Of a stretch of 64,000 bases of DNA, positions 2,973 through 62,325 are shown in pieces. Made by a program: the position numbers and the translations under genes. Under the pieces are notes generated by a model, which made no database searches, was not told the origin of the DNA, and saw nothing but the letters and a program-made list of their open reading frames with translations. The number at the start of each line of letters is the position of its first letter. Positions within the stretch are counted from its first letter, which is position 1. Source of the DNA: Kudoa neothunni (taxonomy: Eukaryota > Animalia > Cnidaria); NCBI GenBank assembly GCA_964304625.1, contig OZ199838.1, forward strand, positions 1,437,158-1,501,157, written 5' to 3'.

Positions 2973-4116
2973 CCCTCTAATGTACTAAAAATTGATTACA
3001 CTCCGACGAATTCTGAGTAAAAAATTACTTAGATTTTTATTTCTCTATTCGAACAAAAAAAAAATATTTGATTTCAGAAAATAAAAATAGGAAAAATTCC
3101 ACCGCTAGATTCAGCTGTAAAACAACTAACATATCTATTAGTAATCATAATCCTACGAAAACTGTATTCGTTAGAATCCACCATGGCAATTTTCGATTAA
3201 GGGCTTTATGTTTGAGCAGATTTCACATTTATATCATGTAATAAATATTTTTATTATTATATGTGAAAAAAAGAAGAACATTCAATGAGAATAAGGTTTG
3301 CAACAGTTTCATACATCTGAAACAAGTAGTAGTGGGTTTCTTATCAATTTTCCGTAAAAACATTCAAACCTTGAATATATTGTTCATTTATTTTGTGTGA
3401 TGAGTTGTAGCAGAATATATAAGGTCGAACTCTTAGTATTTTGAGCGTCAAGGATGTATCTTTCCATTAATGGAAAGATATAATAACTTTGCCTAATTTT
3501 CAAAAACTTTCTCCTAACCATATTATCTCCCAAGTTTTATTTATATATGGAAACCGTATTTATAAATAATAAATCCATTAAATGGAAAAACAACACCATT
3601 GGCCGTCACTATTAATTGTGGGTTGACCCGAATTCTCGGTTTTCGATCTCGTAAGATTCTTCCGATATATCGGATTTAAAATATTCGTAACCATTTTAAA
3701 AGAATTTGACTAATAATTATAACTACTATCGGCTGGATCCATTCCTATTATCACAACAAAAAAGTTTAGTTGAAAGTCACGTGACCGCTCGTAGAAGTAA
3801 TAGTGGTATAACTTCAAATTTATCCATTAGAAAAACTTAAAATTTGTTATATATAATAATAATTATTTTATCTCTCAATTGGTGCGAACAAAATCTGTGG
3901 TAATTTTTTACCCCAAAAATTAATTGGAGTATAATCTTATTATAATTTATTTGATTTTATATTTTTAGTCGTACTATTTTAATATCATATATTATTCGCC
4001 TTTTTGGAAGACTAGAAAAAAATTCATATCCTATGAAGATCAAACAAATCACGTATACAACCAATAACTTCTTGTTGGGGTGAAAATTTACCCCAAATTC
4101 ATTATTCACTAGAGGG
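2973..4116. mobile_element. piggyBac-type non-autonomous element
   Basis: TTAA|CCCTCTAATG at the left end and CACTAGAGGG|TTTAA at the right end. Subterminal ggggtgaaaatttacccc palindrome near 4077-4094. No intact ORF. Confidence 0.65.
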
Positions 4117-4297
4117 TTTAACTATTTATTCCATATTTTGAAATTTTTCTATTTTAAATTGTTCAAAAACTTTTATTTGTCACATTCTAATAATTTATTA
4201 CTGTGTCATGTAATTTTCGATTTAAACCGTCGATTTTATCAGGATGGTTGGACATTACATTTTTTGGATTGTTTCGGAAAATTCGCCTTAATACGAA

Positions 4298-4800
4298 TTG
4301 ACAGAAATGATGTGTTTTGGGTTATTATATCAAGGATTGAATTGGTTAGATGAATCTGTTTTAAAAAACTGCAAGTTAAGGTTACCTAAAAAACAAAACC
4401 ATATGCAGAAACATTTTGCATTATCGAAGCATCGTACAGCCATAGAATCGTTAAAGGATGTCTCCCCAAGGCGATTTCGTTATTTAGAAATGATAAAAAG
4501 AAAAACACAAAGATTTATCTTGTTTCGGCTGTAGTGTATGACAGATTACAATATAATATAATATATAATCACACAAGACCTATAGGTTGTTCCTAAAAAT
4601 ATTGTCCAACAGCACCTTCATATTCTAACGTTAAAACTTTTGTTGATAAGCACTTTCCTACCTTGTTTGAAAAAAAATATTTTGGCAATGTCAATTTTTC
4701 CGACAGTATTTTTTAGACAAACCGTTGTTTGCAATTGCAATAAATTTTTTCGGAGATACGATAAACATGTTCTTTCAGATGAGAGAAAATCTATTTTGAG
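4298..4800 (+). pseudogene. Possible Merlin/ISXO2-like transposase remnant
   Basis: ORF fragment with LDES and 'MIKRKTQRFILF', loosely like ISXO2 DDE motifs; many stops. Weak. Confidence 0.25.
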
Positions 4801-5851
4801 TGGAAAATAGTGTAATTAAAAGCTAATTTTATTACATTCTGTGTATAATCTCGTTTATGTATGAAAGCGTCGAAGATTGCATGCTCTACCAATAACTAAT
4901 TCATACTCTTACATTTATTTCCTTTTTGATTAATAGATTCATAAGAATACGATTGGGTGATCTCGTAAGTAGATACTACGTAAAAATACATTTCTGCCAT
5001 GCAAGGAACCACAATGTTGGACGAATAATTATAAACGGATATTAAAATATTATCATATTTTTATTCTTCAAATTTTGCTAGCTAGTAAATAACACGCCGT
5101 TTTTGAGATTTTTGATGTAACGATTTGTAAAATTGCCATTGTACAAAAAATATTAAAATCATTATTTCGAATTATATCGCCTATTTTAGTATGGAAAAAT
5201 ATCCACATAAAAGGACTCATATTTCCTATTGGCTCATTACTACAGATGAACATTGGTCACCTATAACTATTGTATTTTACTGTAATAACGATACCATTTA
5301 ATCATCCTGTTACGCAAAACCATGTTAGCGACAAAAATATTTCCAAAAGTAATTAAATAACAATAAGAAATTATGGCATCTAAAATGAAAATAATTAATA
5401 TATAAAAAATGAAAAATAAATAGTAAAAAAATTTAAATTCCAAAGGCACACACACACACACGCTCAATAATAATTTTTAATCAAGAAAACTTCTATTCAC
5501 AGCCGTACCCAGCTTTAGTTATTTAGAATCTGTTATATTTAATTGTTTATGAATAACCGATCAACCCTTAAGAATTAGAAAAAATTATAGTCAAAACCAG
5601 TGACACCTTGAATATTATTACCCCAAAAATAGCAACTTCCAAAATATACTTAATCACTAATTAATTTATAATTTGTTGAGAGAAAATATTAATTTTTTTC
5701 AAAATAAATAAAAACTATTAACGACTAATAAGGAATGATTGATTTGAATAATTATTTTAGTCATCTCAAGATAACTACTGAGAGATAGTACGAATTCCGA
5801 GAAAAATCGAAGGGCGCTGACCTATGCCATTTAAGGCCTGAGTCAAGACTC

Positions 5852-5863
5852 CACACATGCGTA
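5852..5863. promoter_or_regulatory. NRF1/Ewg-type motif (degenerate) upstream of RFC1
   Basis: CACACATGCGTA, 35 nt before the ATG at 5899. Confidence 0.4.
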
Positions 5864-5898
5864 CTTAGAATCGATTACTGATATACCGATAAGATCTT

Positions 5899-8651
5899 AT
5901 GCCAAGTATATTTATTTGTTACAAGCTATTTTTAGATGATATAGGACATTTTGATGATAATGACGACAATGATGATGGTTTGGAAATTGCGCCGAAGTAG
6001 ATGAGACAATTTTTAATCCCAACACCTAATTATGGTTTTAACTTAAAATTTAAAAATTCTAGATCATCAATCGCAAGGAAACGTAAAGTGATGATTCTGG
6101 AAGATTCGGATCAATCCAATGAACACTTTCCTCCACTTCAATTTGATGACCAACCTGCCAAATCTACCTCTGATTCCAAGAAAACCACTTCAAAGTATCT
6201 CTTTTTCATCCTAAAGTTAGCACTAAATCAAATATTATTAATGAAGATCTGGGGATAAGAGTGATTCGAATAAACCCACCAAAACGATAAATAACTACTT
6301 TATGGCATTACATCGGGAACCACCCAAAAAATTAGGATCTAGACCTTTACCTAGAGTAGATGATTATTTTTTGCTTTATTTCCAAATTCAATCGATTTAT
6401 TTATTAGGGTAGAGATGATTGTTTGGAAGGTTTGACTTTTGTAATCACTGGAGTTTTGGATTCGATTGAACGTGATGATGCAGTAAATCTAATCAAGAGG
6501 CATGGTGGTAAGGTGACTTCGGCGGTAAGTGGAAAAACATCGTACGTGGTGTTGGGACGCGAAGCTGGTCCTGCAAAGTTGGAAAAAGTGATTTCTGCGG
6601 TTGAATTTTTTTGAACAAAAATTGGTAATAGATTAAAAAATTTAAAACTCCAACTATCGATGACGAAGGTTTGTATAAAATGATTGAAGAACATCCCATT
6701 AGTGCTGATAATGTGGAAGAAAAACAACCACAAAAAGTTAACGATAGTAATACTGTCAAGATTGAATCACAGCCAACAACCGAAATAACTCCAATAAGTG
6801 GCGATTCAAAAACACCAGACACTATAGATATTAAAGCGCCAATATCTACTATTAATTCAAACACATCAGGGTCTAGATCCAGATCAATATCTAGATTGTG
6901 GGTTGACAAATACAAACCTACTACGTTAAAAAATTTGGTGGGTCAACATGGCCCCAGTAGTCCTGCTAACAAACTAGTAGCATGGCTTAATAATTGGTAT
7001 TCTCAGAAAAATAGCGATTCAAAAAAGTCCGGATCGTTTGGAAGGGATGACGGTTCGCAATACAGAGCTGCTTTACTGTCTGGTAAGCCTGGTGTCGGAA
7101 AAACCACAACAGCCATTCTTTGTTGTAAGGAGTTGAACCTGGATTATATTGAGTTGAACGCTAGTGACACACGCAATGGATCTCTACTGAAGAACACCAT
7201 AAAAGAGTCTGCAAAGGGAGGATCGTTTTCTTTTTTTCTCAAACCCCAAAACTCATTGACAAATAACGACCAAAATAAGAACATGCATGTTATAATAATG
7301 GATGAAGTGGACGGGATAAGTGGAAATCAAGATAGAGGGGGTTTAACTGAGTTGGTGGCAACTATAAAAAATACTCGTGTTCCCATTATTTGTATATGTA
7401 ACGATCGATCCAATCCAAAAATAAGAACGTTGGCCAATTATTGCTATGATTTGAGATTTCAACGTCCACGGGTAGAACAAATCAAAGCATTCTGCTCGAC
7501 AATAGCCTTCAAAGAGCAACTATCAATTCAACCTCAAGCACTAAGCGAAATTATTTCTGGTGCCGATCAAGATATTCGTCAAGTGATCAATCGACTGCAG
7601 ATGTGGACAGCCACAAACAACTCACTCAACTTTGATCAAGTTCTCGAGGAAAACAAACACAGCTACAAAGACTCCACACAGAATGTTTTCGAGGCGGTGA
7701 GAAAGTTGATGAGCTCCACCGAATCACATAAAATGTCTACCAACGATAAAATGGATCAGTTTTTCGTTGACTATTCGATTATGCCGTTGTTTGTGGAAGA
7801 AAACTATGTTTTGGTTCAACCAACCTCGTTCAACAACCAACACTCGCACAAAAATCCCAAAATACAAACTCTCAACACATTCACTGATGTCTGCGATCTT
7901 ATGGCATTGTCCACTATCGCCGACAAACTCATACGATCAAAGCAGGCGTGGAATTTACTTCCAGTACAAGGAATGTTGTCGTGTGTTTTACCGTCGGATT
8001 TGGTTAACGGCCACTTACAAGGGATGATAAACTTTCCACAGTGGCTTGGCAAAAACTCCACCCAGGGTAAAAATGAACGTTATCTCGATCAGCTCAATCT
8101 ACACACACGTGTCTCAACCCACTCCAATAGAAAAGATCTCATCCTGGACACTCTACCGTTTGTGCATCGTTATATGGTGGGCAATCTGTGCGACCACAAT
8201 TGTGTTGAGGATGGCTCGTTAGACAGCGTTGTTCAATTGATGAAACATTACAATCTCACCCGCGAAGATTGGGATCTAATACGAGAACTTCAAATGTACG
8301 ATTTGTTAGAGAGTAATAGTTCTAGGAAAATCCCATCAAAAGTTATTTGAATATTAGGGTATGTGTTGATATGTAGATGTATTTTAGACGCTGACTTCAT
8401 TCACGAGATCCCTAAATAAAGTAAAAAGAATAATGCCCTACAACCAATCAAAACCAAATAAAAAAAGTATCAAGGCAGTCGCCGAGGAATTGTTAAAAAT
8501 GAGTATTGATGACAGTGTGGAGGGAGATGAGGAATCCTCGGATGAACTACCAACTCCTGTGTTGGTCAGTAGTGACACCAAAGTTGTAGCTCGAAAACGC
8601 GCCGCCGGTTCTACCACCAGCAGAGCGACAAAAAAGTCCAAAATTATCTAA
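5899..8651 (+). CDS. RFC1: Replication factor C subunit 1 (multi-exon)
   Basis: BRCT domain (CLEGLTFVITGVLDSIERDDA...SAVSGKTSYVVLGREAGPAKLEK). RFC box LWVDKYKP, Walker A GKPGVGKT, ELNASDTR, Walker B MDEVDG, and C-terminal FPQWLGKNST. The ATG at 5899 splices in frame through short GT-AG introns. Confidence 0.97.
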
Positions 8652-25792: not shown

Positions 25793-27582
25793 TCAAATAA
25801 GCCTTTCAACAATATCTAAATAGGAAATAACACCAACTACAATATGCAAATTCATCCAGCCTCGTATTATTGATAGATCGAGCAATATGCTGTTAGGACA
25901 CTTAATAGGATTACTCGAATAATAGAAATTAATATATCGTATTATTGTTGATAAATAATTAAAAAAATATTAATTTATTATTAGACTTGAGAAATAAATT
26001 ATAAAATTGGTCAATAAATATAAAAATATTGTTTGCGGATAAACTTAAAATAATCTGACAATTAAAACTAGATATAAGCTAATAATGGATAGATTTAACT
26101 ATCAGCCAAAACAAATAAGGAGACTTTGACGATGAATTTAATATCAACGTACCCTTAAGAGACATTCCTGAGGAATTGATCTTTGAACTAGAATTTACAA
26201 ACTTTGTAAAGGCATACTTCAATGAGCGTGCATTTTCAAACCTATACCGCAATTTATATTATAATGAAAAATGAGTGTGTAAAAACGGCACCTCGGTAAT
26301 AAATTTAGTATCTTTTCAAATTCTACATCATTTATCATGTTGTAGTTGTTGTGAAGAATACTATAAGAGAAGATTGGAAAAGAGAGATTGGAAATAGAGT
26401 ACAATTTTTTTAATATAATAAGCTCTGCAGGAATGAGTTTGATCTTGTCATCGTGTAAGGCGGTGACTGCGCCTTTACTCTTCAGCTTTTTTCCAATGCT
26501 TATGCTATACCTAAAATAACGGAGGTGGATAAAATGGAAGAGGTGAGCATAGATCAATAGCCATATTTCAACTACCAGCGATCACAACAATTGGGCGCAC
26601 TTCGATTTCGCATTTGTTCTGCAACCCATGTCCAACATACGGGTTTATCACCGTGGGTTTTTTTGAAATCCTCCACCAACTGTGTGAGCTTTGCTACATC
26701 CTTATCAGTCCATCCTTTTTGAACTTGCGTTTTACGAATATTCTCTAATGATGGACCAGGATTTGCATACGCCTCACGTTGCTCTATCGTCATATTACAA
26801 TATTTCGCATTACAAGATCGATTTGATCTATTCAACTCGTTGGCAATAATCGTCCATTTTGGACCATGAAGAGCGTACAACCTAATACACAAAATTGATC
26901 TGAAAATAAAAATCCAATCAATTACTGCATTAATTTTATTATTTCAGTATCACTCCATTCACCTTTCTGCTCGTATTGACAAAAATATCTCTTAGCTTTA
27001 AGAGATGCTGAACGAAGGGGGACATTTAATCCCACACCTTTTCATTGTAAAATATTTATACATTCAATCTAATATAGTCATCAAATAATACATAATCGAG
27101 CGGGGTATTCAGTTTTTTTACGAAACTCCAAAGACTGTGGATCAACTTTTCTTAAGAACTCACTAAAGTCTTTAATGTTATAGTCCTAAGATTTAACAAT
27201 GAATGGTAATAATAATGAGTAGTAATAATGAATAATAATAATAATAATAATAATAAAGTGGAATTAATGCTCGATTTATTGAGAAACATGTAGAGACTGT
27301 ATTACCTTGCAATAATTTTTTATATTTTTTCTTAGCTGTTTCATTTCTTCATAGGTCCAAAATTTCCTTTTTTTAGGAGGTCTCCTAAATGTCACTCTCA
27401 TCTTTGTTTGTGTGTTCTCTCCCTGTGGTTTTCTTCTATCTTTTCTTATATAGTTATCGCCACTGTAACTAGTTTCCTCATCTATATTCATATATCGAGT
27501 GTTTGAAGAGGGGAGATTTTTTAAAACTATAAATACCGGTATAAGCGCACTCGTCTGATGAACTTGCACTACTTCGACCCAT
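25793..27582 (-). CDS. Myb/SANT-repeat DNA-binding protein, TTF1/DMTF1/Reb1-like (multi-exon)
   Basis: Repeats KFWTYEEMKQLRKNI, KGEWSDTE..LYALHGPKWTIIANELNRS...C, and KGWTDKDVAKL...VCWTWVAEQMRNRSAPNCCDRW. The splice path ends ...MSLK|DIVERLI*. Confidence 0.8.
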
Positions 27583-27602: not shown

Positions 27603-27851
27603 TTGCTTATGTTATGTTTAGTCAATCTAGCAATGGTGATTTATCTAACTTTTTTTGTGATTATATTGGGTAGTTTTTGACAATTTTTAATTAATTTTTA
27701 TATTGAAGCTCCAAGGAAACAATTTAACTAATAATCTTCAATTAATCCTCTATGCGAGATTAACAAAATTTTACAACAAATATTTTATTATAATAACCTC
27801 TTAGATGCATTTATTCAATAAAAATTAATTAAAATCGAGTTATTTTGGTAA

Positions 27852-28712
27852 TGGTATAATGTGTAGCTGCCAAAATATTGCCTCTAAGGCGACTCTAATT
27901 TTCCTCTTTTTATTGAAAATTAAATAATCGCAATTTTTAAATATGGACCAGCCATAAATTAGCTTCAAATCACAATAATAAAATGTTTGCACTAATCTTC
28001 GTTCGGCTCATATCGAGACACGCGCATTAGAATGCGCATGCAACCCTAACGTAGTTTTCTACTTGTAATTTAATTAATAATAACTTTTTAACTTACGTTT
28101 CATTAAATTATTATTTTTTTAATGACACTTTTATCTTTTGGTAATATCATTCGAGTGATTTATAATAAAAAATCTCTTTTGACAAAAATAAGTCGATAGG
28201 TGTAACTTTTATTTCACATACCTATATATAACATTCATTTATAAAATTATCTAGCTTATGAATTTTTTAATTCCTTATACAATGTGTCTACAGTAAGTTA
28301 TGCAATAAACAATTGATCACGTATAGTTTCTTACGTTATTGATACAATTTACTGAAGCAATAATAAAGAAAAACGATTTTTGCAATAAAAATAAAATTAA
28401 TAATGTATTGTTGAATGATTTTAATCAAACATATAACGTTACGTTTGTATCTCGACATTATTATCTTGATTAAGTGTACACATGTTGACTTATTTTTATT
28501 GAAGCTCTCGATAAATGGTCGTTTATGATTTTAAAAGTACTCATAAATTTTGTAGATATATCCCATAGAATATTGTGTTTACACAAAAAACGATTACGAA
28601 ATTAATTTATAGTTGGTCCATATTTAAAAATTACGATTTTTCAATTTTTAATAAGAGGGGGAAGATTAGAGTTACGCAACAGGCTTTATTTGGGGAGCTA
28701 CACACTATACCG
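27852..28712. mobile_element. MITE with ~115-bp terminal inverted repeats
   Basis: 27852-27966 (tggtataatgtgtagctgccaaaata...taaatatggaccagccataaattagcttc) is the reverse complement of ~28598-28712. It is flanked by TAA/TTA. Confidence 0.8.
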
Positions 28713-28751
28713 TTATTTTATTTTCGTAAATAACATTCAAAAATTCCTTAA

Positions 28752-38563: not shown

Positions 38564-41500
38564 TTATAGATCATAAGAAATGTCCTTAGAATTTTTTCTG
38601 TAAACAGCTATACCTATCACTACCAAAAGTGAAGCCACGATGGGTATTATTGCATATAATCTAAAAGAGATTATGTATAACAGATATATTTTCCGTTACA
38701 TGTAACTTCCAACAGACCTATCTAATGTCAAACATGAAAATATAAATTTAAGTTACGAATAACTATTCTTTGCAGCATCAAAATTGTGATTTTCTTTATT
38801 ATCTACAATTTTTCATATTTTTTATATAATTAAATTATAATAATTTTACTATATATAATGCTATAAATATGGCATAAAAAATTATTTTACCCTTTCCCAA
38901 CCTTTTCTATTACTTTCTGAACGATATCCTCTACTACAATGTTGGCATACTCGCTCCTTATGTTTTCTCCTTCTATAAATTCTTATTTCCACAAACTATT
39001 TGATTTAATTTACTAAAAATATATCATTATAATTATACAGTAAATAATTGGAATTTTATTACCCTTTCATTTTACCAATTTTGGAGTCTTCGTCAAATAT
39101 ATTATTAGAAAATAAAGATTATTTAATAATTTAAACGAAATATATTTACATTGAATACTATATTTGTTATAGAGTGAGTAATCTTTTGCTTTTAATTTCA
39201 TAATGTAATCTTTTTCCCTCGACAAATTATTGATGTTAACGATACACTTATTGGAAGAACATTCTTCATCATCATTACACCATGTAACAATTTTCCCCTC
39301 CTGGGTGTCTCCGATTTTTTCCTGAATCATAAACGGACATCTTGAATTGTCATCTTTTCCTGTGAAATCCACTTCAATTGTCAAGTCATTATCTCCATTC
39401 AACGAATGCTTAATTGAAATAGCACCATTTACTAAAAAATATAATTAAACATAAGTTAATAGATTCGGAATACTTGTGACAACAGAATAATCCTTTTGTT
39501 TTTTGCCGTCAGATGGTTCGACGATCACCTCGTAAGTCACTCCTAATTCTAGGTTGACAATTTTGAACATAGCATCACATTTATTCTCGCATGCTCCCAT
39601 TCCATCACACGAAGCCATATATTTTGGATCTGAGGCCCTAGTTTTCTTAACATAAATCCTACAGACCGGCAAGTAAGTATCGGTGCCAAATGGTGTTATT
39701 GTAGCGGTGGAACCCTTTTTGATTGGATCTGAATTATTCGCAGTTAAAGTTTCTCCCCCAGCTAAATATATTGTTAATATTTGATGTCCAAATAATATGT
39801 TACTTGTTCGGAATGTTATTTTCTTTATATAATTTTCGATTCCAACGTTGGTTATCGTTACAGAAACTAAGTAATTTGTGCCGGCCAGAAGCTCCTTAAT
39901 AGGATATGACTCTTCACAGCTAGTGTCGCATTCACCACCGTTATCACAAATAGCCCTTGCGTCAGTCGAAAAAGTAGTTGCTCGGCGTATTTTAATTGTG
40001 CACTCTATATTAGACTGACCTGTCTTCATAGTCTTATACACGTTAAGTCCATTAACGGTGACCTCCGTGCCCGTAATATCGCTTATATTTATGCCACTGT
40101 CATTTGCTATAAGACATTATTTTTAAAGTTAAATCCAATATTACTTTTAAAGTATTGTTTGAATCCTTCTCTATCAAACCTTCGTTTTACAATTATTCCA
40201 ATATTCTCATTTTCTTCCGTCAAATTGATAACACCATCTTGACAAAGATGGAAACACTCTTTTTTCTCCTCAGTACATCCATTCAGGACATCGTTTTCTT
40301 GATCTGAGCCATTTCCGTCTATCTTAAATACTTTTATATGACAAATCTCGTCATTGTATGGACCAGGAGAAAATTTTATCTGAAGTTTTCTATTGTCATT
40401 AGCAACCCTTGAAACAGAATAAATGATTTGAGATTTTAGGGGGGTACCAGATTTCAAATAAGTATTATTTATGTAATATAATATTCCAGGCCATAACAGT
40501 GTTGAACTGACATTATAATAACTTATGTATCTATCAAGTGGGAGAGAAGCGGATTTATTTTGTGGAGTCTCAGAATTGGCTCCCATTTTCAAGCTAGTCT
40601 TCATTGTGTCATTATGTGGATCATCCTCCCCATCATATTGTATATTCCATTCAGTTATTGAGTTTGATTTGTAAGAGAAACTAACTTTTCCAGCAGCATA
40701 AGATATTGCATAAGTGTTATCTTGTTTGTAATCTATAAAAAATATCGTTGAAAACTATATTATATAAATATTATTATTTTTAATTACTCATTATTATTGG
40801 GAACACTTGCATCTTTTTACATCTTCTGGCTTCTGCGTCGTCTGCGCCGTAACAAACTGATATATATCGATCAACTTTTGAATTAATGTATCCTACTTTA
40901 AGATCACTTCTATCGCAGTTCACTAAACAATCGCCTCCATCTTCGTCTGCGCAGAGTTGTGGCTTGTTAAATGCATTTTCCCTAAAATCAGCGATTTTTA
41001 TCACACACTTAGTCGCGGAAAAATCTTTCAGTGTAATTGAGAATTTTTCAGCTTCATCACCCGAGGATTTTATAAACTTTTGTTCAAGTTTTCCACTTCG
41101 AATAAAAGCTATAAATGTATGTCAACTTAAACTTCTCTGTAAATGTTACCTGGTATCGATAGTTTTGATGGTGATGATTTTTTGTCTGCGTAAATCATCA
41201 ACCTGTAGTTATACTTATTATCGTATATATCATCAAATACAATTTTGTCGCATTTTTTAATATCAGCCTCTTTCTTACAGTCAATGCAAGACTTAATTAT
41301 TCTCGTGGATGAAGCTATTTAAAGATAATAAAAGTAATATGACATTATTACTTCCGTCATTTTCATGTTTATATAGCTGATAGTAACAGATTGTATCCTC
41401 TGCTTTGTCGAAAGGTTGTTTTGTTTGTAGTAGGAGCTTGTTCTTCTTGGTATCAGTTGAAATTTCAAATTCAATTTGTTCTCCATCTATTTATTATTAA

Positions 41501-44500
41501 TTAATTAAATATGTAAATAATTCCCATTACTGGTTTTTTTGTTAATAATTTGAGTGTCATACGTTCCACTAGGAACAATTTTCAGTTCATACGAAGTATC
41601 GGAATTAAGCCCAATGATGTCGAACTTTGAATTGCACGGTTTTACACACAACTCCTTTACTGCACAAATTGCAGGATAATATAAATCACTTTTCTCTTTT
41701 ATGTAGATGGTACAAATTTTTTCTATAGTCGTTGAAATTTGGGTTATTGTGATTCTATTCGCACTGGTAGAGATTGAATCCTCTTCAATTGAAAGTTGTT
41801 GGTTTTGAGCTAAGAATATATTTAAAATAACTTTCAATCTTATTAAATACTTATTTTATGAAAAAAATATTTTCTTGGTGAGTAATTAGGTATACCCGTT
41901 ATGGTTACCATAACATCGTTATGTAAATGAGTTGGTTCAGGAGTAATTTGAATCTCCCCAAAGCTACAAGCGGGCGATGGATTATTTAAATTTTTCCTCT
42001 CATTTTCAGTAACTAATGGAGCGTATGTGTTCCAAAACTTTATTGAGCATGAAGCGATTGGAGGGGTAATTTCCTCACCATTTTCGTTTTTATTTTTGCC
42101 ATTAATGTCGATTTTAATGTTTGTTTTAGCTGTTGTCGCAGAAGCATCGTCTCCATGTTTCACTAAAAATTTTTGTTATTTAATAAATGGATCTAAATCT
42201 TACATATGTATATATTATTTTGATAACCGATACTGGGTTTCATTCCTAGTTTTAGGACCCTTATTTTAACCGCCTTTACATTCGATTTCATGTTTCCAAA
42301 TTTGTAGTTGTTGCAAATGCTGATAAAACAATTTTCCTTATTATCACATTCATTCGAAAAAAAACTGTTTGAATTTGACGCTGTGGCGTCTATCCACTCG
42401 AATGTGCACATTTCATATGGTTCTGAATTAATCAGTTGAACTGTGAATCTGTTTTGTTCATCATTTTTTATTTCGTAATAAAATCTACTGAACACTGGGG
42501 CATGATTTTTAACAAATGTATTGTCATAGAAATAATGAAAGTCAAAATATTCTGGGCAGCTTATATAATAATCTTTTATGAGCTCATCGAATTGAATTGA
42601 ATAACTTTCAAATTCACAATGGGAGTTGTCAGTTTGTTGTTTATCCGTCGTATAAGTTGGCTTTTCGGTATCCTTGAATGCATTGCACTCTAATGAACAT
42701 TTATTTAAACCCAAGTTTATTTTATCTTCTTTTAATTCAGCTATGTGAGTAAGTTCTTTGAAATGATCTACAAAAATTGTTAAATTTTTTAAGAACTTAT
42801 ATATTACCTATGTAGTATGAATAGACCTTTCCTGCATTAAAAGTAATTGTTTGCGTTTTTGATTGTGACGGTTGTCCTGAGCCAGATGACTCAGATGGAA
42901 GAGGGGAACCTGTTTTTCTCTCACCACTGTTGTCACCTTCATGAGATAGTCCTGCATTATCTGATTGCGATTTTGCAATAATTTCTCTGTTAATACCTGA
43001 TTTTTGGGCATCCGTGTTGATAGTTTTAGTGTTTTGATAAACGACAGAAATATAATTTGGTTTATTCGGACTATTAAGATCAATGGCAAATTTTGTTAAC
43101 AGTTCGTTGCATTTTGTTGAAGTTTTTCCGCTAGGTTTAACAACGGAATAACTCAAAAGGTTATCATTAGATTTTTGGACTGTGCAGTCTTTATCGACCT
43201 TACCAGTTAGATCATTATCTTTGAATTTTATCATGTGCTTTGATTCTGATTTATTGTAATATAGAACCATATTCTGATCACCTTCATCGCTACCACCTAT
43301 AAATGTAAAATTAATATTTCTATAAAAAGAAATTACATTCTATGTTTTTATCTGTCGGTTTAGAGTGGTCTAAATTTATAACCAATAGTTTATATGTAAT
43401 TTCACAGTTGAGAGAATCTAATGAGAAATCTAGGGTGTTAGATCCACTCGTTTGGGCAAGTTTGCAACTTCCGTTCAAACAATCCTTGATAATTTTGTTA
43501 GATCCTTGCTCCAGTAGAATGTATGCCCAAGAAGTTCCTAATGTTTGACCTGCAGCAGCAGTTAATGTAACCGTTGTTATCTTCCCCCGATCATTATCTG
43601 AGGTTCCTATTGTAATATCGATTCCGGTAGCTATTTAAATTCATTATTATTAGAATAATAAAAATAAATTACTCAATTTTGTAATGCTGTTAACGCAGTT
43701 ATATCCTTTCGGACAAACACTTATTTTATAGCTTGTTTTAGGATCAAGGTTAATAATATTGAAATCACCATTACAAGCATCAGAACAAAATTCATTAGCT
43801 TCACCTTTTTTACATGTAGCAGGATACATCGATGTATCGCTTTCAGCAACTGAATAATAGAGTTCACATTTTACTCCGTTCCTGTTTTCATCGGAAAATA
43901 AATTGGATAAATTTAGATTTAGTTTGGTATGTTGATTAGGAATTGTTTTTGGAGTAAGATTACCACGATTATTCGCTAAGTCATCCCCTATTTGAAATTA
44001 TAGATATAGACGTAATATGTACCGTTACCTTTAGTTTTGAAATAAAAATAACGGTGATAATGATTAACTTCAGGAGAATCTAATGTTGTGAGTCCTTTTA
44101 TCTTAAATTTTAAAATGTATTCTGTTAGTGGCATAAGCGACTTCAAACTAATAGACGTGAAGGCCATACACCCTCCGTCACACGTAAGATTTTCCCAATT
44201 ATCTTTAATTCCAAGATTCTTCTCAATTATTTTAACTTCTACGATAGCCGCTCCTTGTTTTACATCATTGTCGCCCTCATTTTTACCTAGACTATTTAAA
44301 TTTATAGTTGTTGAATCTTTGCCGATAGAAGTAACAGTAGGTTGACTGGTAGCGACTATAGAATCGATATGAAACATTAGATAAACTTCAATTTACATGT
44401 GATAGTTTGAATAAACTCTTTTGGTGTTATCTTATCAAAGGGTTTAACGAGTACTTGGGCGAACTTGAAATCTGTCTTATGGTATAAGGTCGCTTTGTAG

Positions 44501-45434
44501 CAAGGCTGAAGACAGGGCCCAGCTCTATTCATAGCTGAGCAACTAGAGGAAAAATGAGAGTCATTAATATCTTTAATTCCAAAATAGCAAATTTGCGAAG
44601 GTTTTGGATTTTGGAGTGTAATTGTGTAATAATAATTTGTATTTTTTGACCCAGTTGCAATAAACCAATCCTCATCAGGTTTTTTTGGATTCAATAAAAT
44701 TCCTGGTGAGCAACTACCTAGTTCAATCACATACGTAGGTTGATATGACTTAGAATATAATGTAATAGATTTGGCTGTATAAAATGCAGGCGACGATCCT
44801 TGTCTTTCTTTTGACACAGAATCTTCTTTGTCTTTCAATTCGCCGCTTTCTTTACTTTGAACTGAAAGAGTGAATGTAGTATTTGCTTTGGTTGCGGTCA
44901 ACGAACTCTTTATGTAAAGATCTATTTTATTATATTAAAATATTACCAAATAAGTTAATATACCTTTTATAGAAAAAACCTTATTGGCCGGACAGTTTTT
45001 CACATCAGTATCATCCTTACCTTGACACCATTTTATGTATTTGATGGTTTTGAACTCTTGACCACTGAGATTTAATTCGGTTTTTATACATTTGTAAATA
45101 CACATCTTTGAATCATCATCCATTGTCGTACCACCTATGTCTTTAGTGCACGTAGAGACGCCAATCTTCGCCCTATTTTGTCCATAGTATTGGAGAGCGC
45201 AATGTTTGAAACTATTCTCAATATTATATCCAGAAAATGAAATAATATAGTTCCCTTTACTACGTGAAAAATTCACTTTCATTATGTTATTATCAATATT
45301 ATCAGTGATCACATTTTTCGAATATAACACTAATAACGTTTAATATACATATAATCTCAAAGAAAACTACAAGTAAAAATGACGAGATATATTATAGAAG
45401 CATATCGTTGTCTCGAAGACAATTTCATCATCAT
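38564..45434 (-). CDS. Orphan type I transmembrane protein with ~18 Cys-rich FN3-like extracellular modules (~20 exons)
   Basis: Signal peptide MMMKLSSRQRYASIIYLVIFT|LLYSK. Successive ~270-550 nt exons, mostly with phase-1 introns, carry C-x-I-Y...C-x5-8-C-x3-C...I-x-NL-x3-T-x-Y motifs. TM segment LYAIIPIVASLLVVIGIAVY and tail RKNSKDISYDL*. Confidence 0.85.
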
Positions 45435-47767: not shown

Positions 47768-48416
47768 TTAAAAACGTTCGGTTTTTGCAATAAAATAAAT
47801 TTCAGCCATAAAAACCACAGTCATGATAGTCAGCGCCACCATCACACGATAGGACTCCGATTTAAACGCTACAACGGAACCATAATAACCAAACACAAAC
47901 GACCCAGCCAACGTAACCGTTAGCCCGATAAAAGACCAAAATATTTTGGACAGCTGAGATAATTCATGCCGAAAATCACCATAATGACTATTCGCTCCAT
48001 TACGCGAACGGCCCCAAACAATCAGTATTTCTTATCATATGCTCGTATACAGCCCTGTCTTTCATTTCCCTCAAACGCTCCATTCGTGGATTTGATAATG
48101 GGGAATCGTTTTCAACATTGGATTCGAGATCCAAAGATTCCTTCAACAAATCAGTTGGCTCCATTTTATTATCGAACAGCTCCTCCGTAACAAAGCTACA
48201 GTCTTTAATAATATCACAAAATGTTATTTCTCTTTGCAGATCGTCTACGACCAACTGATTGATTATGTTCTTCAGATCTTCAATGGAATTACAATTAGCT
48301 ATAAGCTGATCGTATTTTTCTTTTGAAGAAGAATCAGATGATAGCGCATGGTTCTCATTCGCCAATTTTGATAAACTCTCTTTTGCCGATGATCCTACAA
48401 CAATCCCAACCTTCAT
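47768..48416 (-). CDS. TMEM199: V-ATPase assembly factor TMEM199/VMA12; needs a 1-nt correction at the run 48012-48015
   Basis: RMERLREMKDRAVYEHMIRN, then in the shifted frame two TM helices IFWSFIGLTVTLAGSFVFGYY and RVMVALTIMTVVFMAEIYFI. This matches the Vma12 pattern R...L......Y..M..N ... AE.Y. Confidence 0.85.
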
Positions 48417-60995: not shown

Positions 60996-62325
60996 TTAAA
61001 CATCAATAACTGAGTCGGAATCATATTCATCGGATAGCAACTGATTTTTGGTGTACATATCGTCGGGGGCTTTGCAATAGTGTTTGTTGTGATATTCGTT
61101 GAGGAGAAGATTGTGATTCATTGATTTCAGGGTCAATACTAAGTGATAGCTGTTGGCCGAAATCATTTCACACACCTATAAAAATAATTATTAAAGCTCG
61201 AGATGATTCAAAAAAACTCACTTGGTTTATAGATCTTGATATAACATCGATGCCATTCACTTCGAGGATTTGATCGTTTACTTGCATTATTCCTGTCAAA
61301 AAAGCCAATCCGTTTGGAACTATTCTCGAAATATAGATTCCACTAGAATTAACGTCGTCAGGAATGCCTTCTCTATAATAGAAAATTTCAGATTTCCAAT
61401 TCCACCTATGATTAAAAACCTCAAATAGAAACCAAGAGGACGATCTTCGTCGTTGTTTTTGTAAATTTTCACTCGAATAATCGAGGTTGGTAAATGTTCA
61501 CTGTCGATCACAGATGAAACATGCTTGAATTGATCTGGTGCACTTATCACCATTCTTCCTGGTTTACATTCAGTGTAATCCCTCAACTTGACCGATTGAA
61601 GTGTCGACTTTTGCGACCTTTTTAGGAAAGAAAACTTCTTTGTGGGTGTGTAGGGTACATAATTTTTTAAGCAACCATTCAAAATAATAATTAGATACAA
61701 AGGCTTGTTATTGGAGTGAGCATGATCGATAGCCCTTTTACAGTTGGCATCGTTGGTTATCTCCAAATAGCTGTTCTTCACAGTATCAATATACCAAATC
61801 TAAATTTATACTACAATATTGTTGGAGAATTTTATTTTAAATTCACATGTAGGGTTCTGTATTTGTTACAATCGTTGTTGGTGGAATATTGTGGTTGGAC
61901 AACCAACTCTCTGCTTTTACCCAAATATTCTCCCTCTTGCTTATTATCATCAGCTGTGGCGTCGTATAATTTTATAACAATCGATCGCTGAAATTCAAAA
62001 TTAGGTGATTACTTGTAAATGGCTGAACAGAATGTGGAAACGGATGCTTTTTTTCTGCCCCCTTTTCCAAATCCCAAATAGTTTGAGAGGTGAAGTTCAA
62101 CATTTTCTCATCCAGCATCTTCTCATAATCGTACAAAGATTTCAAATTGGATTTATCCAACAAATTTATTTCTTTCATTGCCATAAAACGCATTCGATTC
62201 ATTGTTTCAGCAAATATCTTTGGTATTGTCACTCTCTTGTACGTATCCTCATACTATAACAGTAAAAAAATCACATCTCCGATTTCTCGTAAATCTACAA
62301 CTACTCTTATTTTGATTGTCAACAT
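60996..62325 (-). CDS. PARD6: Partitioning-defective 6 homologue (PB1, semi-CRIB, PDZ); needs a 1-nt correction near 62058-62062
   Basis: PB1 start MLTIKIR|YEDTYKRV and OPCA-like IWYID...LEITNDANCKRAI. Semi-CRIB ISAPDQFKHVSSVIDSEHLP. PDZ RPLGFYLR...GIYISRIVPNGLA..TGIMQVNDQILEVNGIDV...V.EMISANSYHLVLT. Confidence 0.92.

What the first reader, a model, noticed from the sequence alone, without database searches (positions are those of the whole stretch)
38564..45434. Large orphan surface protein built from a Cys-rich FN3-like module
Seen: a signal peptide, ~18 modules of ~90-110 aa, one TM helix and an 11-residue tail, roughly 1,800-2,000 aa after splicing. Several modules keep the FN3 E-F strand motif (NLDPKTSY, NLELGVTY, GLNSDTSY, ELLAGTNY, SLMPLTEY). 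They lack the usual strand-B Trp and carry an insert C-x-I-Y-x8-12-Y-P-A-x-C-x5-8-C-x3-C. Known: canonical FN3 domains are normally disulfide-free. Inference: a lineage-specific, disulfide-stabilised FN3 variant forming a long adhesin, coat protein or receptor, possibly host-facing. I do not recognise it as any named family.
Basis: partly seen in the sequence, partly recalled or inferred. Interest (0 to 1): 0.85.

Follow-up and report, generated by a model that had tools for sequence, protein, structure and literature searches.

The report
Variable fibronectin-like coat family, fish parasite
This gene from a tuna-infecting parasitic cnidarian encodes a long cell-surface rod of 18 fibronectin-like domains with extra cysteine staples, and it is one of about 65 reshuffled copies, the pattern other parasites use to vary their surface, so it is a testable candidate for how these parasites evade fish immunity.

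Summary
The gene is real, but it is not a lone orphan. The genome matches the published Kudoa neothunni (myxozoan) assembly. The minus-strand gene has 22 exons and 1,960 codons: signal peptide, 18 modules arranged as three repeats of six, a 56-residue stalk, one TM helix and an 11-residue tail. One module was predicted as an FN3 fold and one exon as two FN3-like sandwiches. Eleven modules carry four cysteines (inferred pairs C1-C4, C2-C3). About 65 colinear paralogues and at least 70 more distant matches lie on all three chromosomes. They are under purifying selection (dN/dS 0.2-0.7) but mosaic, with near-identical membrane ends, a hypervariable insert, and about half of the sampled copies broken. 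Full-module matches elsewhere came from only two samples; no named family matched. The TM exon stays in frame only if two nested [D1,2] twin introns are removed, a layout the papers I found describe only in fungi. Best reading: a variant surface coat or adhesin repertoire (about 50%). No RNA was available. This scan had already noted the family and the twin introns on other DNA of this genome.

The parts
45371..45434 (-). exon 1, start codon and most of the signal peptide
   Evidence: basic n-region plus hydrophobic stretch in paralogues; cleavage not predicted with a dedicated tool
44964..45329 (-). exon 2, module 1 (unit 1, position 1; 6 Cys)
   Evidence: similar to exon 13, hhalign 95.7%
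44397..44921 (-). exon 3, modules 2-3 (second has 4 Cys)
44029..44355 (-). exon 4, module 4 (2 Cys, SLMPLTEY)
43673..43987 (-). exon 5, module 5 (6 Cys, NLDPKTSY)
43337..43630 (-). exon 6, module 6
42808..43296 (-). exon 7, module 7 with a hypervariable, length-polymorphic Ser/Gly/Lys/Glu-rich insert (about 43030-42870)
42204..42767 (-). exon 8, modules 8-9 (8 Cys)
41851..42162 (-). exon 9, module 10 (keeps C1 and C4 only)
41531..41809 (-). exon 10, module 11 (4 Cys, GLNSDTSY)
41150..41486 (-). exons 11 (41486-41352) and 12 (41314-41150), together module 12
40788..41108 (-). exon 13, module 13 (6 Cys)
40145..40732 (-). exon 14, modules 14-15; predicted as two tandem FN3-like beta-sandwiches
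39804..40106 (-). exon 15, module 16 (4 Cys, ELLAGTNY)
39762..39803 (-). 42-nt in-frame intron without a stop in this copy
   Evidence: GT and AG in 19 of 19 paralogues, most of which carry stops here
39474..39761 (-). exon 16, module 17 (4 Cys, NLELGVTY); predicted FN3 fold
39150..39431 (-). exon 17, module 18 (4 Cys)
39064..39087 (-). exon 18, 24-nt stalk micro-exon
   Evidence: same length in the distant relative
38973..39063 (-). first [D1,2] twin intron: inner intron 39062-39013 (50 nt) splits the outer donor G|TAAAT; outer intron 41 nt
   Evidence: 20 of 20 copies and distant locus L039; not shown by RNA
38892..38972 (-). exon 19, stalk
   Evidence: dN/dS 0.19-0.20 in this frame
38803..38891 (-). 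second [D1,2] twin intron: inner 38890-38849 (42 nt), outer 47 nt
   Evidence: 20 of 20 copies and L039; not shown by RNA
38700..38802 (-). exons 20 (38802-38757) and 21 (38717-38700), stalk micro-exons
38564..38660 (-). exon 22: TM helix, 11-residue tail, stop codon
45435..46470 (-). upstream block co-duplicated with the gene in close paralogues (72-84% identity; about 280 nt in all close copies, up to 1 kb in some); candidate promoter

Best explanation
Shown or computed: a type I membrane protein of Kudoa neothunni whose ectodomain is 18 FN3-type modules (a six-module unit, triplicated), most with extra cysteines, encoded by a family of about 65 colinear genes that exchange sequence, keep their membrane ends nearly identical within subfamilies, vary their ectodomains and often decay. 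Inferred: cysteines pair C1-C4 and C2-C3, the first bond perhaps standing in for the lost strand-B Trp; the protein stands as a long, glycosylated (20 sequons), protease-resistant rod on the parasite surface; the 11-residue tail anchors rather than signals. Most likely working: a variant surface coat or adhesin repertoire facing the host, with different members shown by different stages or cells and new mosaics made by gene conversion, so that antibodies to one member miss others. The twin introns must be removed in order for the anchor to be made; mis-splicing would give an anchorless form (inferred). Architecture about 90% sure; the confidence given is for the function.
For: Fold. Family size and colinearity. 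Purifying selection: dN/dS 0.2-0.7 per exon. Mosaicism: the nearest paralogue changes from exon to exon; the last exons are mostly 94-100% identical to the nearest close copy against 69-90% over most of the ectodomain; neighbouring informative sites are more compatible than in any of 1000 shuffles (0.503 vs 0.581). Sites with omega above 1 in exons 6, 7, 10, 12 (p 5e-7 to 2e-3; 3-10% of sites). About half of 21 copies broken. Myxozoans change antigens during development and antigenic variation has been suggested (PMC8481699); its molecular basis is called unknown (10.64898/2026.02.11.705288).
Against: No RNA, so expression, stage, one-at-a-time expression and localisation are untested. Most sites are conserved and paralogues stay 45-80% identical, mild for an antigen under antibody attack. 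The positive-selection test is home-made and inflated by recombination, pseudogenes and the hard-to-align insert. Loci are dispersed and clustered internally, not confined to chromosome ends. The exact architecture is kept in a relative at about 30% identity, which fits a conserved binding or structural job equally well.
Confidence: 0.5

Rival explanations
1. A repertoire of adhesins or receptors, each binding a different host ligand or tissue (fish mucus, muscle, annelid gut); diversity reflects specificity, not immune escape.
For: Tandem FN3 rods are typical adhesion ectodomains (own knowledge); strong purifying selection; fixed 18-module order kept in a distant relative.
Against: Frequent mosaicism and about half broken copies fit poorly with many dedicated receptors; no RGD motif.
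Confidence: 0.25
2. Self or cell-cell recognition inside the parasite (cell-in-cell development, gamete or strain matching), working like Hydractinia Alr proteins by isoform-specific homophilic binding.
For: Myxozoans are cnidarians; Alr proteins are a variable single-pass family with a Cys-bearing Fn3-like domain (PMC9546547).
Against: No Ig domain seen in the parts folded, cysteines not on strands B and E as in Alr, no ITIM or ITAM in an 11-residue tail, genes spread over all three chromosomes.
Confidence: 0.12
3. Structural component of a spore valve, plasmodial envelope or polar-capsule membrane, cross-linked by its cysteines; copy number supplies dosage.
For: Cysteine-rich and glycosylated; cnidarian capsule walls are disulfide polymers (own knowledge).
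Against: Cysteines are kept or lost in pairs within modules, as for internal bonds; dosage predicts near-identical copies, not 45-80% identity.
Confidence: 0.08
4. Decoy or mimic of host cytokine receptors that soaks up immune signals.
For: Exon 14 model aligns to EPOR, gp130 and IL-12 receptor FN3 pairs.
Against: Those matches tie with dozens of other FN3 proteins (Z 6.7-7.8); no WSxWS motif; no sequence match.
Confidence: 0.05

Closest known systems
FN3-repeat type I membrane proteins (R3 receptor phosphatases such as PTPRJ/PTPRQ, CD45, DSCAM and LAR FN3 regions)
   Same: Long tandem FN3 ectodomain, one TM, phase-1 module exons, E-F Leu/Tyr motif; these fill the fold and profile searches.
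   Different: No catalytic or signalling tail; no strand-B Trp in the best modules; four-Cys pattern; outside the two related samples no domain scores above 20 bits against 42-83; a 65-copy recombining family.
Giardia/Spironucleus VSPs and the VSP-like genes of the myxozoan Sphaerospora molnari
   Same: Multigene family of Cys-bearing type I membrane proteins with a short conserved tail in a parasite.
   Different: Cys 3.3% (VSP over 10%), one CXXC and no CXC (VSP over 5), 1,960 aa against 300-700, FN3 fold (criteria from 10.64898/2026.02.11.705288).
Hydractinia Alr family
   Same: Cnidarian, variable, single-pass, Fn3-like domain with unusual disulfides (PMC9546547).
   Different: Alr has 1-3 Ig domains plus one Fn3-like domain, a B-E bond and an inter-domain bond, and some tails with ITAM/ITIM; here 18 modules with Cys at strand C, C' and the C'-E loop, and no such tail.
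Class I/II cytokine receptor ectodomains
   Same: Tandem FN3 domains with disulfides near strands C'-E (own knowledge); structural ties.
   Different: No WSxWS, no signalling tail, no sequence match.
Fungal [D1,2] stwintrons
   Same: [quoted passage not shown]
   Different: In an animal, at fixed positions in a whole family, and not yet shown by splicing intermediates.

Membership tests
FN3 superfamily | Beta-sandwich of FN3 topology | tested here: met
   Exon 16 model: top matches nearly all FN3, Z 8.0-8.9, TM 0.65-0.72; exon 14: two sandwiches, Z up to 7.8. 3 of 18 modules folded.
FN3 superfamily | E-F loop Leu and strand-F Tyr corner | tested here: met
   Y76 invariant and L70 at least 90% in 72 modules of four exon types; absent or unclear in the other module types.
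FN3 superfamily | Strand-B Trp | tested here: not met
   No conserved Trp in exons 5, 10, 15, 16.
FN3 superfamily | Pfam fn3 above the curated cut-off | tested here: inconclusive
   This gene 18.4 bits, below 25; 23 of 72 modules match weakly, best E 3.6e-5; several other family matches in the genome reach 25-26.8.
VSP (diplomonad / S. molnari type) | Over 10% Cys and over 5 CXC/CXXC motifs in 300-700 aa | tested here: not met
   3.3% Cys, 1 CXXC, 0 CXC, 1,960 aa.
VSP (diplomonad / S. molnari type) | Signal peptide, single TM, short conserved tail | tested here: met
Variant surface antigen system (functional class) | Multigene family with recombination, pseudogenes and conserved anchor | tested here: met
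Variant surface antigen system (functional class) | Surface exposure, mutually exclusive expression, switching, antibody recognition | not testable with these tools
   No RNA holder; 0 reads laid from two RNA runs.
Hydractinia Alr | Ig domains plus one Fn3-like domain with six invariant Cys (B-E and inter-domain bonds) | tested here: not met
   Cys at start of strand C, end of C' and C'-E loop against PMC9546547; no direct profile comparison with Alr sequences was run.
Class I cytokine receptor | WSxWS motif | tested here: not met
[D1,2] stwintron | Inner GT-AG intron between nucleotides 1 and 2 of the outer donor; removal restores a GT donor and the frame | tested here: met
   40 of 40 positions in 20 copies (10% in shuffles), 2 of 2 in L039; TM reached in 19 of 20 copies against 0 of 20 by single long introns.
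[D1,2] stwintron | Splicing intermediate seen in RNA | not testable with these tools
   No RNA reads.

The most novel reading that the evidence does not exclude
Kudoa has built a true antigenic-variation system, like var or vsp but in an animal parasite, from an animal FN3 module: about 65 genes plus more distant relatives are expressed a few at a time and reshuffled by gene conversion, and ordered twin-intron splicing switches the product between anchored coat and shed decoy.
Probability: 0.15. Interest if true: 0.92.

Novelty: new variant of a known kind. Interest (0 to 1): 0.68.

Why it matters
How myxozoans vary their surface is an open question, and no vaccine or treatment is on the market (PMC8481699). 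This names a concrete family, about 1% of the genome and of its predicted genes, that the genome paper does not mention (no hit for fibronectin, transmembrane, surface or gene family in PMC12239612) and that Pfam and standard splice rules miss. It gives direct tests (per-plasmodium RNA-seq, serology) and a conserved stalk as a possible diagnostic or vaccine antigen. It also adds an FN3 variant with an apparently undescribed cysteine pattern and a clean animal candidate for [D1,2] twin-intron splicing.

Tried and rejected
RNA check: no RNA run holds the gene; two metatranscriptome runs gave 0 reads, which is no test. Pfam on single exons: nothing above cut-off. PDB sequence search: only the generic E-F motif, nothing for the exon 3/8/14 type. 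Atlas feature search: unnamed or fn3 leads at 0.90 or below. Word-indexed homologue searches: one hit each. Plain GT-AG readings of the 3' end were rejected because they end before the TM in all 20 copies; skipping both exons 18 and 19 does keep the TM in frame (18 of 20) and cannot be excluded as an isoform, but exon 19 is under purifying selection in the twin-intron frame. Several separate genes: rejected by 20 colinear copies and conserved splice sites. A hidden intron in exon 7 of this copy: not conserved, rejected. Host contamination: rejected (30% GC, about 41-nt introns, embedded among RFC1, SMC5-like and Vma12-like genes, no fish match). One search failed and one search had a shared-file bug; only one search is used.

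Full report
Source. The window lies on the largest of three chromosomes (17.15, 12.04 and 11.05 Mb) of a 40.26 Mb genome with an 18 kb fourth contig carrying a very divergent cox1. An earlier scan note named Kudoa neothunni. I checked this against the genome paper: span 40.2 Mb, N50 12.0 Mb, GC 30.4%, a circular mitochondrial contig and short introns all agree (PMC12239612; window GC about 30%). So this is almost certainly a myxozoan, a parasitic cnidarian assembled from an infected tuna. RFC1 in the window is at most 48% identical to named animal proteins and 54% to two unnamed runs.

Gene model. The gene runs on the minus strand from 45434 to 38564. Twenty-two exons join into 1,960 codons without a stop, with 65 Cys, 9 Trp, 20 N-glycosylation sequons, one TM helix at 1929-1949 and the tail RKNSKDISYDL. 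Ordinary introns are 37-62 nt, mostly about 41; 19 of 21 are phase 1. Splice dinucleotides are conserved in 14-19 of 19 paralogues. A 42-nt intron at 39803-39762 has no stop in this copy but is marked by GT and AG in 19 of 19 paralogues. No RNA supports the model: none holds the stretch, and two RNA runs gave no reads; the genome paper also found too few parasite reads. The model was searched exon by exon; the joined protein was not sent to any search or folding tool.

The 3' end. Between exons 18 and 19 and between 19 and 20 the gaps are about 90 nt, twice the usual intron. Removing each as one GT-AG intron shifts the frame and never reaches the TM (0 of 20 copies). Each gap has a conserved midpoint YAG followed by T[AG], and the base before the gap is always G. 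Removing the first half joins that G to TAAAT and makes a new donor; removing the second half restores the frame and reaches the TM in 19 of 20 copies (the other is broken upstream). The midpoint is present at 40 of 40 positions against 10% in shuffles, inner and outer introns are 38-54 nt, and both are kept in a relative at about 30% protein identity. This fits the definition of a [D1,2] stwintron (PMC12403724); the seven papers devoted to stwintrons that my search found all concern fungi. I noted it before seeing the scan's earlier notes, but the scan had reported it on other copies.

Modules. Exon profiles show a six-module unit repeated three times: exons 2~13 (95.7%), 3~8~14 (84.5, 68.0), 5~10~16 (97), 4~9 and 4~15 (32, 50); positions held by exons 7, 6, 11-12 and 17 are only weakly linked, and exon 15 also resembles 10 and 16. 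The alignment of exons 3, 8 and 14 shares three invariant Cys. That gives 18 modules. AlphaFold2 on a 72-sequence alignment gave the exon-16 module pLDDT 81; its best matches are nearly all FN3 domains (Z 8.0-8.9, rmsd 2.1-3.6 over 74-84 residues; Foldseek TM 0.65-0.72, E 0.01). Exon 14 came out as two tandem sandwiches (pLDDT 73) matching FN3 domains at Z up to 7.8, a weaker result. Only these three modules were folded. Sequence agrees: invariant strand-F Tyr and E-F Leu, weak fn3 hits in 23 of 72 modules, and more distant matches in this genome just above the fn3 cut-off. Eleven modules have four Cys. The two-Cys modules keep either the outer pair (exons 7, 9) or, by my reading of the spacing, the inner pair (exon 6; exon 4 is ambiguous), and in exons 4, 7 and 9 the pair is lost together in odd copies, so I infer C1-C4 and C2-C3; exons 2, 5 and 13 add a third pair near strands F-G. 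I could not read bond geometry from the models.

Family. Exon 2 matches 65 loci, exon 8 about 67 and the TM exon 55, on all three chromosomes, singly and in tandem clusters (my counts from the tables). That is about 0.45 Mb, 1.1% of the genome. All 20 fetched copies have the same exon order. A further 70 or more matches at 20-34% identity, a lower bound, often show the same neighbouring exon types. Per-exon dN/dS is 0.2-0.7, so the ectodomain is constrained. Yet the nearest paralogue changes from exon to exon, the last exons are mostly 94-100% identical to the nearest close copy, and site incompatibility rises with distance (0.46 within 50 nt, 0.59 beyond 500; 0 of 1000 shuffles as low), which points to gene conversion. 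Exon 7 holds an insert that varies in length and sequence. A simple M1a/M2a test finds 3-10% of sites with omega above 1 in exons 6, 7, 10 and 12; recombination and alignment noise make this weak evidence. About 10 of 21 copies look intact; the rest have frameshifts, stops or, in one case, a 3 kb transposon. At the published QV of 48.5 few of these should be assembly errors.

Range. In 1.84 billion representatives the only full-module matches were four gene calls from two samples, scoring 42-83 bits per domain against 20 or less for all other listed FN3 proteins. One sample (ERZ28624939) is a close relative, mostly 40-70% identical by exon. The other (SRR33849685) is about 30% identical, has the same exon order, stalk, TM and short tail, and also gave the best RFC1 match. 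Neither organism is named; I infer related myxozoans. No named myxozoan or free-living cnidarian protein with the module appeared, but the list was cut at 150 and crowded by generic FN3 proteins, so absence is not shown.

How it likely works. The anatomy is a long, glycosylated, disulfide-stapled rod with almost no cytoplasmic part, so it is a coat or adhesin rather than a signalling receptor (inference). A large, mosaic, part-decayed family with a conserved anchor is the pattern of variant surface antigens in other parasites (own knowledge), and myxozoans are reported to change antigens through development (PMC8481699) by means called unknown (10.64898/2026.02.11.705288). I put this at 0.5. 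A ligand-specific adhesin repertoire (0.25), Alr-like self-recognition (0.12), a spore or envelope structure (0.08) and cytokine decoy (0.05) remain.

Comparison and verdict. It is an FN3-fold protein lacking the strand-B Trp. It fails the tests for VSPs (3.3% Cys, one CXXC), class I cytokine receptors (no WSxWS) and Alr (other Cys positions). The genome paper does not mention it and two literature searches found no description. It is a new variant of a known kind: an undescribed family from a familiar fold. The scan has noted the family many times on other DNA of this genome. Interest 0.68: it makes an open question testable, but the function is wholly inferred.

Noticed in passing
L033, about 3 kb inside exon 14 (about 3790-6780 counted along the gene's strand; locus G000:C2:6327900-6337800): A DNA transposon with about 259-nt terminal inverted repeats (95% alike) and transposase-like frames, by eye Mutator-like, interrupts this paralogue.
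   Followed up: partly
window:46541-47603, second copy window:1843-2866: An interspersed repeat of about 1 kb lies upstream of this gene and beside at least seven paralogues, in either orientation; no long ORF.
   Followed up: partly
L029 and L032, exon 7 insert: Where other copies have the coding hypervariable insert, these two have an AT-rich GT...AG stretch that looks like an intron, so the insert may be an exonised intron or a new intron.
   Followed up: partly
window:39149-39088: This 62-nt intron is longer than usual, often ends in AAG, and is unusually conserved among close copies (distance 0.05); it is 41 nt in the distant relative.
   Followed up: no
window:40787-40733: Intron 13 varies from 46 to 120 nt among paralogues, unlike the other tightly sized introns.
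   Followed up: no
window:6671-8350 (+): RFC1 has a 1.7 kb uninterrupted coding stretch in an otherwise intron-dense genome; its closest matches (54%) are also long open frames.
   Followed up: partly
window:50833-57492 (-), 48000-48416 (-), 61320-62232 (-), 26572-27569 (-): Neighbours look like SMC5, a Vma12/TMEM199-like gene, Par6 and a Myb-repeat gene (by eye; only a weak Vma12 Pfam hint).
   Followed up: no
window:32272-33042 and 27849-28715: Two pairs of inverted repeats (183 nt at 84%, 113 nt at 81%), probably small non-autonomous transposons.
   Followed up: no
G000 C3:78000-460000, C2:7.9-8.8 Mb, C1:16.4-16.9 Mb: Clusters of distant matches to exons 8 and 15-16; they include most of the genome's best Pfam fn3 matches, suggesting a much larger superfamily.
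   Followed up: partly
window:38400-44399, runs X1 and X2: About 40 variant positions in the DNA contigs, densest near the 3' end; alleles and near-identical paralogue ends cannot be told apart.
   Followed up: no
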